This document shows, piece after piece, positions 1-2,812 of a stretch of 64,000 nucleotides of DNA. Source of the DNA: Macrostomum lignano (lineage: Eukaryota); contig NIVC01000037.1 in the NCBI GenBank assembly GCA_002269645.1, positions 1,178,001 through 1,242,000 on the forward strand, in the 5' to 3' direction. The translations under genes and the position numbers were made by a program. The stretch's first letter is position 1. Every line of letters starts with the position of its first letter. A model generated the notes under the pieces. It searched no databases. It saw only the letters and a list, made by a program, of their open reading frames with translations, and had not been told where the DNA came from.

Positions 1-2780
1 GTCTGCGTAGAGCTTCAGTTTGCAGTCCGTATGGGCCTCTTTAATCTCCGTGTCCAGGTCGTTGATGTAGACGACCCAGAGCAGGGGAGCCAGCACGCTG
101 CCCTGGGGGAGGCCTTCCTTGAAGATTCTTTCATTGCTCAGGCAGTTGCCGACTCGTACGCGGGCACGTCGGTCGGCAAGGAAGCTCCGGATCCAGCGGA
201 GCACGTCGTTAGGGATGCCGAGCTTTTTCAGCTTGGCGATCAGCCCAGCCCTCCAGACCCGGTCGTAAGCACGACTAAAGTCGAGAAGGCACAGCACTGA
301 CCGCAGGTGTGGGACCGCCTCCAGACCGTCAAAGATGTCCTGGCAGGTGCTCGCGATGAGTTCCTCAGTAGAGCGGCCGCGGCGGAAGCCGGCCTGGGTA
401 CTGCTGAGGCGGCCAGAATTCTCGAGGGCAAAGCGCAGGCGTTGGAGCACCATCCGTTCGGCCAGTTTGGCGATGCTGCTGGTGAGTGCCACTGGGCGGT
501 AGGACTCCGGGTTACTAGGGTCTTTCCCTTTCTTGGGATAGGTATGATGACCGATTTCTTCCATTGCATCGGGCAGTCTCCTTCCTTCCAAGACCGGTTG
601 ATGAGGTCCAGGAGCCTCAGGTCCGTGGTCGGTGGGAGTCTTTTAAGCATGTCGTTGGTAACTCCGTCCGGGCCTGGTGCCTTCCCGGATTTGAGCGAGC
701 GCACAGCGCTGCGGTATTCGGTCAGGCTGAAGGCGGAGCACATGTCGGTGCGTGAGCCATTGCACGTGCAGCTGGAGTTGAGGGCTGCTCTCGCGGCTTG
801 ATTGGTGTGGGCGTCTTGGGGGCCTCCTTTAACTCTAGAGACAGCGGCGTATTGCTGACAGAACAGGTTGGCCTTCTCCAGGTTGGTGCGGGCCGGCCGA
901 GATGGTTCTTGCTGCCCCGTCTTCTTTCTCTGGAGGGAGGCGCCGCTATTTGGTTTGGGGCCATCGCCACGCATCTGGCGCAGAGTGCGGAAAAGGTCGC
1001 TGTTGATGGTGAGCTCAGCTGCCTTCTCGCTCCAGGCGCGGCGTTTCTCCTGGCGGATCACCTTTCTGGAGTTGTTACGGGCCGCTTTGAACCTAGCCAG
1101 GTTGTCGTCGCTCGGGGACAGCTCGGCGACGTGCCGGGCTTCTTTGCACTCCCGGGTGGCTTGGGCGCAGGCGTCAGTCCAGAATGGTTTCGCAGCAGTT
1201 CTGGCCCCTTTGGGTATGTTATGGGCAGCGGCCGTTAGAATGTCGTTACAGATGATGGCGTGAAGATGTGCGAGTTGGACGCCGTGAGTTGGGTAGTCAG
1301 CCCTTTGGCCGTCGATCTTAGTGAGTTCGTCCTTAAAGCTCCCCCAGTCCGCTTTGCGGAAGCACCACGTGGCCCGTGGCAGGTTCTTGCCCTTCCGTGG
1401 CGCTCTGGGGTGTCTCTGGACCGGGAAGGAGATGGGCAGATGGTCGGACCCCAGATCGTCGAGGGTCGTCCAGCCCTCCGCGATGCCTTGCAGGAGGTTG
1501 TTGCTGGTCCAGGTAAGGTCCGGAGTAGATTTGCCTCCTGTTGCTGGGTTAGTTCGCGTATGGTAGTCGCCGTTTGCAAGTCTCAGGTTGCGGGAGGTCG
1601 CCCAGGCTTCCACTATTTTGCCGCGCTCATCTTCGTCTTGGTGCCGGTCCCAACTGCCGTGGGCGTTGAAGTCGCCGGCGACGACGGTGGGGCCAGTGGC
1701 GTTCGGGACCAGATGAAGCGGGGGTTGCCAGGTTTCCCCCCGTTGGTTGCTGGTCGGTGGTGCGTAGAGGGAAACCAGCGTGATCGGCTCCTGGCCTTTG
1801 AGGTGGATGGTGGCGGTGGCGCAGTCTAGCAGTTGGCGTTCGTTGTCCGGCGGCGATGGCGTAGTGTCGGACGCAATGTCGGCGCGCACTAGGATCAGGG
1901 TGCCTCCTCTGGTGTGGGTCGCTTTGTTCGTCCTGTTCTTGGGCCGAGTTATTGGCGGCTTCGAGGCGGCGGTCCTCCGTGCCTGCTCCTGTTGGTTGTC
2001 GGTCGGCTCACGATTGTGTTGCGCACTCTGGGTCTGGGCCTGTGGCTGCGGTTGCGGTGGTTGTGGCCACGGCTCGTCTCTGCGGGTGCAGGCGGTTCTG
2101 CCTGAGCGGCAGCCGCGGCACCACTCCGCCTTATCATTCTTGTCAGCCGGCCAACGGATGCGGCAACGTGGGCGCTTAATCTTGCGGCCGCAGTTTGCCC
2201 ATGGCGTGGGGCAGTTGTCCGCGCTGGCCCCTTCGTTAGGGTTAGCTTCGGGGCCACTGGGTTGGGTGGGCTGGAGAGGTGCCCCCCCTTCCTTGTTCTC
2301 GGTGGCCCGGGTGCCGGCGGCCTCTTTAGGAAGACCGTCGCAGCGCGCGGCGACGTAGTATCCGGTAGGAGGGATGTAATCTGTGTCTCTGGCAAGCTTC
2401 GTTTCCTGCAGTAGGACCGCAGCCGGACGATTGACGTGGAGCCATTTAGCCAGCTCAGTATGACGGCTCTTGACGCCGTTACAGTTGAACTGTAGGATGA
2501 GCTCTGGGCCCGACTCCGCGGTATTCCTCCGGCGGCCGTGCTTGGGTCGGCGGTCAGGATGGTCGCAACCGCCTCGCAGTCGCAGGACTTGTTCAGTAGG
2601 TAGGCTCTCAGCATGGGGGGCGTCGGTCGAGATCTGTTGCCCTTGTTGTTGTTGTTGCTGAGGTTCGGTCTCCATGCACGCAGTATTGGCTCTCTCGCTC
2701 CATATGGAGCATCGCTGATTGTGAAGGCCATTAGTCGCCTCGGTCCTGTTGCGCGGACCGGGGGCGTCCGGGGACCCCAT
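1..2780 (-). CDS. Retrotransposon ORF: 71-aa leader, APE endonuclease, RT (partial); 1-nt frameshift at about 535-537
   Basis: ATG at 2780-2778 is in frame with ORF 240..2861. After IIPIP the RT continues in another frame (PKKGKDPSNPESYRPVALTS...LYAD), restored by one extra base in the GGG run at 535-537. Confidence 0.9.
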
Positions 2781-2812
2781 GGTGTTCGCTCGGAGGGTGC
2801 CTTCTTGTCCCC
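2723..2812 (-). ncRNA. Predicted HDV-like self-cleaving ribozyme at retrotransposon 5' end
   Basis: Folded by hand: P1 GGGGAC(2812-2807)/GUCCCC(2775-2770); P2 GAAGGCA(2804-2798)/UGGCCUUC(2730-2723, one bulge); P3 CCC/GGG; L3 begins UCCGAG; P1.1 CC(2793-2792)/GG(2769-2768); P4 CGCC-CC-CGGUCC/GGACCG-A-GGCG; J4/2 ACUAA with catalytic-type C at 2734. Confidence 0.75.

What the first reader, a model, noticed from the sequence alone, without database searches (positions are those of the whole stretch)
1911..2812. Retrotransposon 5' cassette: ribozyme, embedded AUG, ubiquitin-tail leader, modified endonuclease
Read on the minus strand, the first 0.9 kb of the element stacks an HDV-like ribozyme whose G1 is the element boundary, an AUG inside that ribozyme, a 71-aa low-complexity leader ending VLRLRGG, and an APE domain with a large Cys-rich insert. 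Established: trypanosome L1Tc has a 5' HDV-like ribozyme and a 2A peptide upstream of APE, and 2A-like peptides occur there in other APE-type elements. Inference: this family uses the same layout but replaces ribosomal skipping with host deubiquitinase cleavage. I do not know of this combination being described, but I cannot search.
Basis: partly seen in the sequence, partly recalled or inferred. Interest (0 to 1): 0.88.

Follow-up and report, generated by a model that had tools for sequence, protein, structure and literature searches.

The report
Retrotransposon with ribozyme and ubiquitin-tail leader
The 5' end of a jumping gene (a non-LTR retrotransposon) carries a probable self-cutting RNA with the protein start codon inside it. 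Where its relatives have a 2A "ribosome-skipping" peptide, it has the last residues of ubiquitin, which suggests an undescribed and untested way of trimming the element's protein.

Summary
All four observed features are real. Window 2812 to 1 (minus strand) is the 5' 2.8 kb of an APE+RT non-LTR element.

- **Ribozyme:** bases 2812-2723 fit every helix of an HDV-like ribozyme. A close relative (L027) keeps the fold with five compensatory pair changes. Four more distant relatives carry canonical HDV-like ribozymes at their 5' ends.
- **Start codon:** the first AUG (2780) lies in an unusually long L3 loop, also in L027.
- **Leader:** the 71-aa leader ends VLRLRGG. RLRGG is kept in three diverged lineages (window, L027, Macrostomum lignano), and all five codons differ between them.
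- **2A position:** many relatives, including the closest ones, have a 2A peptide (GD[VI]ExNPGP) at that position. RLRGG appeared in no other lineage among the 110 best matches from 1.84 billion representative proteins.
- **Endonuclease:** it carries a ~140-aa loop insert with a clade-wide four-Cys motif.

The "2A replaced by ubiquitin tail" layout is therefore supported. Cleavage by host deubiquitinases is inference, because the leader has no detectable ubiquitin fold. RNA self-cleavage is also untested, and the M. lignano relative shows no ribozyme. I rate it a new variant of a known kind.

The parts
2723..2812 (-). Putative HDV-like self-cleaving ribozyme, 90 nt. G1 = 2812. P1 2812-2807 with 2775-2770. 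P2 2804-2799 with 2728-2723. P3 2797-2795 with 2778-2776. L3 2794-2779 (16 nt). P1.1 C2793,C2792 with G2769,G2768. P4 2766-2736. J4/2 2735-2729, with the candidate catalytic C at 2734.
   Evidence: Descriptor hit. All pairs are standard. The fold is conserved in L027, with 5 pairs changed on both sides and 98% of cells paired; slid controls give 0-1. A six-way comparison with L003, L004, L028 and L029 shows covariation in P1, P2 and P3. Rfam is negative, but it also misses the canonical L003 ribozyme.
2778..2780 (-). Start codon inside the ribozyme, at the 3' end of L3 running into P3'. It is the first AUG of the element RNA, in the context ACCAUGG.
   Evidence: Sequence. Same position in L027. 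Relatives L004 and L029 have an in-frame AUG at J1/2-P2. L006 appears to have one in its P4 loop, by manual fit to a damaged copy.
2568..2780 (-). 71-aa leader ORF, low complexity. Its first ~19 codons overlap the ribozyme.
   Evidence: No Pfam family at E<=10. The body is not alignable with the M. lignano leader. Outside the ribozyme overlap it aligns poorly with the L027 leader.
2568..2588 (-). VLRLRGG, the ubiquitin C-terminal tail motif and proposed processing site (cut after G71, between 2568 and 2567).
   Evidence: 7/7 identical to ubiquitin 70-76. RLRGG is conserved in M. lignano (L001/L007) and L027, and all five codons differ among the three. It aligns with the 2A of relatives.
2499..2567 (-). 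Basic linker (CDHPDRRPKHGRRRNTAESGPEL) between the tail motif and the endonuclease. Relatives have an equivalent R/K-rich linker after their 2A.
2334..2498 (-). N-terminal part of the APE endonuclease (ILQFNCNG ... LLQETKL ... AARCDG).
   Evidence: Aligns to L1 endonuclease residues 10-75. Coordinates.
1911..2333 (-). Insert of about 140 aa in an APE surface loop. It contains the four-Cys motif at 2165-2088 (an extended Cys-rich stretch spans 2213-2088).
   Evidence: gap relative to solved endonucleases. (motif C-x6-16-WCxGC-x5-7-C in ten sequences of the clade). The AlphaFold model gives the APE core pLDDT 70-87 and the insert 33-50. No Pfam hit.
1344..1910 (-). C-terminal part of the APE endonuclease (RGGTLILVR ... 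GDFNAH ... SDHLPI), followed by the conserved FRKADW.
   Evidence: PF14529/PF03372. TRAS1 endonuclease 1wdu alignment.
1..1343 (-). Spacer and first part of the reverse transcriptase. A one-base frameshift lies near 540. The element continues beyond the window start.
   Evidence: PF00078 1.5e-27 on 540-1. Frames.
2813..2860 (-). 5' flank: a CAG/CAA-rich tract that reads as poly-Gln in the element's frame. On the + strand it is the CTG tract of the host receptor's signal peptide.
   Evidence: The L027 and M. lignano insertions have the same kind of flank in the same frame.

Best explanation
This is the 5' end of an APE-type non-LTR retrotransposon. Its clade combines a 5' HDV-like ribozyme, a start codon in or just after that ribozyme, and a short leader peptide. 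A leader-release module follows, then a basic linker, then APE (with a Cys-motif loop insert) and RT. RNase H follows in the relatives where the 3' part is seen.

The proposed mechanism has four steps.
1. The element is transcribed as part of a longer host or read-through transcript. The ribozyme cuts 5' of G2812 and so defines the 5' end of the element RNA. This is inferred from structure and covariation.
2. Translation starts at the AUG embedded in the enlarged L3 loop. The position is shown; its use is inferred.
3. The leader ends in the ubiquitin tail RLRGG, at the position where relatives carry a 2A skipping peptide. The positional replacement and the purifying selection are shown.
4. The APE-RT protein is freed from the leader, and from any host-encoded N-terminal extension, by proteolysis after Gly-Gly. 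A ubiquitin-specific protease is the most likely agent. This step is inferred and untested.

The tail may descend from a captured ubiquitin: M. lignano has LHRVLRLRGG, and L027 has EDG..D.N..LH.V.RLRGG. It may instead have arisen in place from the Leu/Arg-rich half of the 2A: relative P0021 has LIRLRAGD, one residue away from RLRGG. This remains unresolved.
For: **Ribozyme**
- All five helices form.
- P1+P3+P4 alone scores -31.4 kcal/mol against a nested minimum of -32.3, before P2 and P1.1 are added.
- L027 (about 80% identical) keeps every helix: G1-C becomes G1-U, two double changes in P2, three in P4.
- L003, L004, L028 and L029 have the same order and spacing of elements, with different complementary P1, P2 and P3 sequences.
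- In L003 the ribozyme G1 abuts an opposite-strand RT fragment. In L004 the ribozyme interrupts an LTR-element ORF.

**Leader-release module**
- An upstream NPGP (2A-type) motif occurs in 23 of the 75 related proteins in which an APE start was recognised. Where there is no PHD finger it lies 20-46 aa before the APE.
- The motif is also present in L004, L006 and the metagenome loci.
- RLRGG occurs only in the window, P0005/P0121 (M. lignano) and P0079/L027.
- MAFFT places VLRLRGG[C/D]x7P under LLxLRAGD[VI]ExNPGP.
- The RLRGG codons are CGA CTG CGA GGC GGT (window), CGT CTA CGC GGA GGC (M. lignano) and CGG TTA AGA GGG GGC (L027). The flanking leader is not conserved.
- The residue after GG is C, D or G, never P.

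**Literature**
- L1Tc/ingi elements have an HDV-like ribozyme (PMC4035085).
- 2A lies N-terminal to APE in several clades (PMC3708506).
Against: - No biochemical evidence exists for either cleavage.
- The leader has no detectable ubiquitin fold. There is no Pfam hit at E<=10. Without the 7-aa tail, similarity to ubiquitin is not significant: p = 0.055-0.12 for L027, 0.15-0.20 for the window, 0.10-0.31 for M. lignano.
- From my own knowledge, cellular DUBs depend on the ubiquitin body, and short LRGG peptides are poor substrates.
- The window ribozyme has a 16-nt L3 (usual ~7) and a G1-C pair in place of the G1-U wobble.
- A covariance model built from L003+L004 does not find the window ribozyme, and Rfam finds nothing.
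- The M. lignano RLRGG element, whose 5' end is mapped by an empty site, has no HDV-like fold.
- All three RLRGG copies seen are defective: a frameshift, a 2.9-kb fragment and an internal deletion.
- The 3' part of the family has not been seen, so an element-encoded protease cannot be excluded.
Confidence: 0.55

Rival explanations
1. RLRGG is a real processing or recognition site, but host deubiquitinases do not read it. It could be cut by a cysteine protease that recognises (L/I/M)-x-G-G without a ubiquitin fold. Clan CE adenain/Ulp-like enzymes do this, as do papain-like polyprotein proteases. Such a protease could be encoded in the unseen 3' part of the element or by another mobile element. 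The motif could also act uncut, for example as a DUB-binding decoy.
For: The motif is conserved while the leader body is not, so recognition must rest on the tail alone. L-R-G-G fits the (M/L/I)xGG-x type of consensus known for such proteases (own knowledge). Some non-LTR ORF2 proteins are reported to be fused to DUB domains (preprint PMC13405545). Only 2.8 kb of this family is visible.
Against: No protease domain is seen in the visible part, nor in full-length relatives of the clade such as P0032, which is APE-RT-RNaseH-zf. A trans-acting protease from another element is unparsimonious.
Confidence: 0.2
2. The ribozyme-like fold in the window/L027 lineage is a conserved 5' RNA structure that no longer self-cleaves. 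It might serve translation initiation or recognition by the RT. The enlarged L3 and the embedded AUG would have disabled catalysis.
For: L3 is 16 nt in both the window and L027, against 7 nt in L003, L004, L028 and L029. The window has G1-C. The covariance model and Rfam do not recognise it. Covariation proves a conserved structure, not catalysis.
Against: The core is intact in both copies: UCC at the start of L3 pairing with GG (P1.1), C in J4/2 within ACUAAU, and G at +1. L027 has the canonical G1-U. The similarity between the window and L027 is strongest from G1 onward.
Confidence: 0.2
3. VLRLRGG is a functionless relic, either of a decayed 2A (its Leu-rich 'stall helix' half) or of a captured ubiquitin fragment. 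Its match to ubiquitin has no present role.
For: It aligns with LLxLRAG of the relatives' 2A. A poly-Leu helix upstream of GDxExNPGP has effects of its own on protein abundance (preprint PMC13405545). All observed copies are defective.
Against: Five of five codons differ in all three lineages with no amino-acid change, while the neighbouring residues and the NPGP half of the 2A are gone. The poly-Leu character is lost (V-L-R-L-R). M. lignano matches 9 of the last 10 ubiquitin residues.
Confidence: 0.07

Closest known systems
L1Tc / ingi elements of trypanosomatids (Pr77 HDV-like ribozyme plus N-terminal 2A plus APE-RT-RNase H)
   Same: Single long ORF. HDV-like ribozyme at the very 5' end. A leader-release module just upstream of APE. 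RNase H follows RT in relatives of the window element (PMC4035085; PMC3708506).
   Different: The window lineage has RLRGG instead of 2A, an AUG inside an enlarged L3, and a Cys-motif insert in an APE loop. Clade membership by RT phylogeny was not tested.
HDV-like ribozymes of R2, RTE, Baggins, R4/R6 and SART non-LTR elements (Ruminski et al. 2011, J Biol Chem 286:41286, cited from memory; Eickbush lab, PMC3774820)
   Same: 5'-terminal position, nested double-pseudoknot architecture, a role in co-transcript processing, and a reported link to translation initiation.
   Different: 16-nt L3 carrying the start codon, G1-C in this copy, not detected by the Rfam models, different element clade.
2A-bearing APE-type non-LTR elements (CR1, Crack, L2, Rex1, Ingi; Odon et al. 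2013, PMC3708506)
   Same: Single ORF, with 2A (with or without a PHD finger) in the N-terminal region before APE. Relatives of the window element show this directly (L004, L006, P0011, P0016, P0021, P0026).
   Different: The window element lacks D[VI]ExNPGP. It keeps only a Leu/Arg/Gly stretch that now equals the ubiquitin tail.
Natural ubiquitin fusion genes (polyubiquitin, ubiquitin-ribosomal protein fusions) and ubiquitin insertions in viral polyproteins
   Same: An N-terminal module ending in LRLRGG, followed directly by the functional protein. Release is by ubiquitin-specific proteases.
   Different: Those fusions contain a complete, highly conserved ubiquitin fold. Here only the tail is conserved.
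LxGG / (M,L,I)xGG polyprotein sites cut by viral papain-like or adenain-type proteases that double as deubiquitinases
   Same: A short ubiquitin-tail mimic without a ubiquitin fold, used as a polyprotein cleavage site.
   Different: Those systems encode their own protease. None is detected in the visible part of this element or in full-length relatives.

Membership tests
HDV-like self-cleaving ribozyme | Nested double pseudoknot: P1, P2, P3, P1.1 and P4 in the canonical order (PMC4908430) | tested here: met
   All helices form with standard pairs. They are conserved with compensatory changes in L027 and across L003, L004, L028 and L029.
HDV-like self-cleaving ribozyme | Cleavage site at the first nucleotide of P1, a G that forms a G-U wobble | tested here: inconclusive
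   G at +1 in all six sequences. G1-U in four (L027, L003, L004, L029) but G1-C in the window and L028. Cleavage itself was not tested.
HDV-like self-cleaving ribozyme | Short L3 (about 7 nt) supplying P1.1, and a catalytic C in J4/2 | tested here: inconclusive
   The UCC...GG P1.1 and C2734 within ACUAAU are present and conserved in L027. L3, however, is 16 nt in the window and L027, against 7 nt in the other four.
HDV-like self-cleaving ribozyme | Match to curated covariance models (Rfam HDV clan) | tested here: not met
   No hit even at E<=10. The canonical-looking L003 ribozyme is missed too, so the test has little power.
HDV-like self-cleaving ribozyme | Mg2+-dependent self-scission | not testable with these tools
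   Needs in vitro transcription and a cleavage assay.
Ubiquitin / ubiquitin-like (beta-grasp) domain | Beta-grasp fold detectable by sequence profile | tested here: not met
   No Pfam family at E<=10 for the window, M. lignano or L027 leaders. Shuffle test without the tail gives p = 0.055-0.31.
Ubiquitin / ubiquitin-like (beta-grasp) domain | C-terminal LRLRGG followed by a non-Pro residue | tested here: met
   VLRLRGG|C (window), VLRLRGG|D (M. lignano), VMRLRGG|G (L027).
2A ribosome-skipping peptide | GD[V/I]ExNPGP motif with an upstream Leu-rich context | tested here: not met
   No NPGP in any frame of the window. The aligned positions read GGCDHPDRRP.
APE-type non-LTR retrotransposon | APE endonuclease followed by a reverse transcriptase in one ORF | tested here: met
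   PF14529, PF03372 and PF00078. Solved endonuclease relatives 1wdu and 1vyb.
Ingi/L1Tc clade specifically | Placement by RT phylogeny, plus RNase H and a C-terminal zinc finger | not tested
   Only about 180 aa of RT lie in the window. Relatives do have RNase H and zf-RVT. No reference RT set was available.

The most novel reading that the evidence does not exclude
A retrotransposon lineage specialised for CAG/CAA (poly-Gln-coding) repeats inserts in the Gln frame. It therefore rides on host transcripts and host reading frames, and it frees itself twice. At the RNA level an HDV-like ribozyme does the cutting. At the protein level a bare ubiquitin-tail mimic that replaced the ancestral 2A is cut by host deubiquitinases. 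This would be the first transposon known to use the host ubiquitin-processing machinery as its 'polyprotein protease'.
Probability: 0.2. Interest if true: 0.85.

Novelty: new variant of a known kind. Interest (0 to 1): 0.68.

Why it matters
- Two ways of freeing a retrotransposon protein from upstream sequence are known: a separate ORF and 2A skipping. A conserved ubiquitin-tail motif at the 2A position would be a third, host-dependent route. It would also be a natural example of interchange between 2A and ubiquitin-type release modules.
- The data extend 5' HDV-like ribozymes to a further group of animal non-LTR elements. The start codon has been placed inside the ribozyme at two or three different positions (J1/2-P2 and L3, and probably the P4 loop of L006). 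This bears on the open question of how uncapped, ribozyme-processed element RNAs are translated.
- Both claims can be tested directly with short constructs.

Tried and rejected
- **Rfam:** gathering and E<=10 searches on the window, L001 and L003 gave no ribozyme family, even for the canonical L003 ribozyme. I therefore treat the negative result as uninformative.
- **Covariance model:** a model built from L003+L004 does not recover the window ribozyme. It rests on two sequences and is dominated by primary sequence.
- **RNAfold z-score:** the 95-nt 5' end scores -0.5, which is not significant. Nested folding cannot score a pseudoknot.
- **M. lignano ribozyme:** strict and relaxed descriptors, helix enumeration and DNA alignment found none.
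- **Same-family copies:** none elsewhere in the window. The window ORF is not on record. The second word-index protein search was swamped by low-complexity words.
- **Organism identity:** the host kinase exon has best hits of only 52-55% identity, all unnamed, so the source organism remains unknown.
- **Ubiquitin fold in the leaders:** no Pfam hit and a non-significant shuffle test. L027 is only suggestive.
- **AlphaFold model of the post-GG protein:** the APE core is moderately confident, but the insert has pLDDT 33-50, so it says nothing about the Cys motif.
- **Metagenome scan:** 18 distant relatives. Nine of the loci with upstream sequence carry a 2A-type motif followed by a PHD-like finger; none has RLRGG, and my descriptor found no ribozyme in them.
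Full report
**What is in the window**

On the minus strand, from 2812 down to the window start, lies the 5' 2.8 kb of a non-LTR retrotransposon.
- The conceptual protein has an APE endonuclease (PF14529 3e-16, PF03372) and the first 180 aa of a reverse transcriptase (PF00078 1.5e-27).
- The ORF starts at the ATG at 2780. It has one frameshift near 540 and runs off the window.
- There is no second copy in the window.
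- To the right of 2812, the + strand encodes the signal-peptide/ectodomain exon and a kinase exon of a receptor serine/threonine kinase-like host gene. The source organism could not be identified; the best kinase hits are 52-55% identical and unnamed.

**The ribozyme**

Counting from G2812, the RNA reads:

GGGGAC aa GAAGGC a CCC uccgagcgaacaccau GGG GUCCCC GG a [P4, 31 nt] acuaaug GCCUUC

This is the order P1-J1/2-P2-P3-L3-P3'-P1'-P1.1-P4-J4/2-P2' of an HDV-like nested double pseudoknot (defined in PMC4908430).
- Every pair is a standard pair.
- P1+P3+P4 alone (-31.4 kcal/mol) nearly equal the nested minimum (-32.3), before the pseudoknot helices are added.
- By itself the fit is weak evidence. 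A loose descriptor gives about 20 hits in the 128 kb of the window, the RNAfold z-score is -0.5, and Rfam reports nothing.
- A descriptor limited to the architecture seen in relatives hits only 2812. It hits nothing in 400 shuffles of the element, but it was tuned after the fact.

The decisive evidence is comparative.
- **L027**, a Logan contig found through its Cys motif, has a 5' end about 80% identical to the window.
  - It keeps every helix. G1-C becomes the canonical G1-U. Two P2 pairs and three P4 pairs are changed on both sides.
  - 98% of cells pair, and slid controls give 0-1 double changes.
  - L3 is again 16 nt, beginning UCC and ending in the AUG.
- **Four more distant relatives** carry canonical HDV-like ribozymes with 7-nt L3 loops and C(A/G)AAGU in J4/2: L003 5959-6025, L004 1565-1626, L028 2912-2982 and L029 1801-1866.
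  - Their element spacing is the same as in the window, while the P1, P2 and P3 sequences differ but remain complementary.
  - In L003 the ribozyme abuts an opposite-strand RT fragment. In L004 it interrupts an LTR-element ORF. Both fit G1 being the element terminus.
- Rfam misses the L003 ribozyme too, and a two-sequence covariance model misses the window. These negatives therefore carry little weight.
- Open points: the 16-nt L3 and the G1-C pair of this copy may weaken or abolish catalysis, and self-cleavage is untested.

**The embedded AUG**

- The AUG at 2780-2778 (ribozyme positions 33-35, context ACCAUGG) is the first AUG of the processed RNA. It is conserved in L027.
- In L004 and L029 an in-frame AUG sits at J1/2-P2 (position 8 or 7). 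The protein P0021 called in L029 starts exactly there.
- In L006, a damaged copy that I fitted by hand, an in-frame AUG lies in the presumed P4 loop.
- A start codon inside the ribozyme therefore recurs at two or three different places. This fits the reported link between HDV-like ribozymes and translation initiation (Ruminski et al. 2011, from memory; PMC4908430 mentions it).

**The leader and the ubiquitin tail**

- The 71-aa leader ends VLRLRGG (2588-2568), identical to ubiquitin 70-76.
- The same motif precedes the APE in the M. lignano element (P0005/P0121: NLHRVLRLRGG|D) and in L027 (LLHVMRLRGG|G).
- The leaders are otherwise unalignable.
- All five RLRGG codons differ among the three lineages:

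| Lineage | R | L | R | G | G |
|---|---|---|---|---|---|
| Window | CGA | CTG | CGA | GGC | GGT |
| M. lignano | CGT | CTA | CGC | GGA | GGC |
| L027 | CGG | TTA | AGA | GGG | GGC |

This is strong purifying selection on the peptide, not on the RNA.

- A profile search of 1.84 billion representative proteins returned 110 relatives. In 75 sequences of the retrieved set an APE start could be recognised, and 23 of these carry an upstream NPGP (2A-type) motif. Only the M. lignano cluster and P0079 carry RLRGG.
- The closest non-RLRGG relatives carry L[LI]xLRAGD[VI]ExNPGP 20-46 aa before the APE, followed by the same kind of basic linker (P0011, P0016, P0021; also L004, L006, P0026).
- MAFFT places VLRLRGG[C/D]x7P column for column under that 2A.
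- Nine of the metagenome loci also show a 2A-type motif followed by a PHD-like finger, and none shows RLRGG.
- The layout '2A replaced by ubiquitin tail' is therefore supported.

**Origin of the tail**

- *For capture of ubiquitin:* M. lignano matches 9 of the last 10 ubiquitin residues. L027 aligns to ubiquitin 49-76 (13/28 identical, E = 0.001) and has GETITIE against GKTITLE.
- *For in-place evolution from 2A:* P0021 reads LIRLRAGD, one A-to-G change from RLRGG, and the terminal Pro column is shared.
- Without the tail, similarity of the leaders to ubiquitin is not significant, and no Pfam ubiquitin hit appears. I leave the question open, leaning slightly towards capture.

**Mechanism**

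Cleavage after GG by host ubiquitin-specific proteases is the simplest reading.
- It is how natural ubiquitin fusions are processed.
- The residue after GG is never Pro.
- The rest of the leader is free to vary, as expected if it is discarded.

The main objection is that cellular DUBs normally require the ubiquitin body (own knowledge), which is absent here. Two alternatives remain:
- a tail-only protease of the (L/I/M)xGG type, possibly encoded in the unseen 3' half of the family;
- a function that does not involve cleavage.

Full-length relatives show no protease. No paper in the library links LRLRGG or RLRGG with transposons, and searches combining ubiquitin with retrotransposon terms found no description of this layout.

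**The endonuclease insert**

- Relative to solved APE-type endonucleases, about 140 residues are inserted between the parts that align to L1 endonuclease 10-75 and 105-241.
- The insert carries C-x(6-16)-W-C-x-G-C-x(5-7)-C, a basic four-Cys motif found in ten sequences of the clade. In L004 it lies N-terminal to the APE, in two copies.
- In M. lignano and L027 a PHD-like finger lies in the same insert.
- Pfam has no model for the motif, and AlphaFold gives low confidence there.
- A role in target or chromatin recognition is a guess.

**Limits**

- Three RLRGG lineages are known, and all observed copies are defective.
- The M. lignano copy is a 2.9-kb 5' fragment. Its 5' end is fixed by an empty paralogous site (junction ...CTAATG|TGGGACCGAACGG). 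It shows no ribozyme.
- The boundary at G2812 cannot be fixed independently, because the 5' flanks of the window and L027 are both CAG/CAA-rich.

**Verdict**

This is a new variant of a known kind: an L1Tc-like ribozyme-plus-leader-release layout with a ubiquitin-tail motif in place of 2A.

Noticed in passing
window 2813-2860 (minus strand); L027 1-87; L007 10783-10843 with empty site L008 ~3876: All three RLRGG-type insertions have a CAG/CAA-rich 5' flank on the element's strand. Each reads as poly-Gln in the element's own reading frame (EQQQQQQRQQ|W.., QQLQQQLQQQ*Q|R.., HQQQQQQQSLM|W..). This suggests target preference for (CAR)n tracts in a fixed register, and possible translation as a host fusion. 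The 2A-type relatives L003 and L004 lack such flanks.
   Followed up: partly
window 2813-3461 (+) and 4690-5349 (+): Host gene: a Cys-rich three-finger-like ectodomain plus a TM segment (weak CD59/Ly6 match, below cut-off), and a Ser/Thr kinase exon of TGF-beta/activin receptor type. The element sits in the (CTG)n signal-peptide coding tract, and no host start codon remains on this side. This copy of the gene may therefore be disrupted.
   Followed up: partly
window 3476-4729: Tandem array of about 40 copies of a 31-bp unit (CTATTCCAGCTGTAGTAGTATTTGTGCCACC, 92% matches) between the two host exons. It generates spurious repeat ORFs at 4229-4721.
   Followed up: partly
window 46380-46919: Tandem array of about 26 copies of a 21-bp unit (GGGGTAGGACACTTCGACTGA). 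In one frame it reads (TLRLRGR)n, which produces false 'LRLRG' matches unrelated to the element.
   Followed up: partly
window 2088-2165 (minus); P0005, P0011, P0018, P0026, P0029, P0032, P0079, P0082; L004 ORF 1923-2996: A basic four-Cys motif, C-x6-16-WCxGC-x5-7-C, is conserved across the clade and has no Pfam family. It usually lies inside an APE surface loop. In L004 it lies N-terminal to the APE and is duplicated. M. lignano and L027 also have a PHD-like finger inside the APE loop.
   Followed up: partly
L004 1572; L029 1807; L006 ~697: In 2A-bearing relatives the in-frame start codon also lies inside the ribozyme, but at other places. It is at J1/2-P2 in L004 and L029, and in the presumed P4 loop in L006. 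The L006 ribozyme is damaged and was fitted by hand.
   Followed up: yes
L007 10843-13784 versus L008 3876-4410; L001: The M. lignano genome holds filled (two paralogous or haplotypic contigs) and empty versions of the same locus, a C2H2 zinc-finger gene. The insert is only a 2.9-kb 5' fragment, and 534 bp of host sequence is missing next to it. This implies a later deletion. The annotated proteins P0005 and P0121 are host-element chimeras.
   Followed up: partly
L027 ~445-462: L027 lacks the N-terminal half of the APE (an internal deletion). It reads TAETNPGP just after the Cys motif. This is a 2A-like C-terminal half in a non-homologous position and is probably a coincidence.
   Followed up: no
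L003 5959-6025: Rfam release 15 gives no hit, even at E<=10, to a ribozyme that fits the canonical HDV-like descriptor: G1-U wobble, 7-nt L3, GCGAAGU in J4/2. Curated models therefore miss this retrotransposon ribozyme group.
   Followed up: yes
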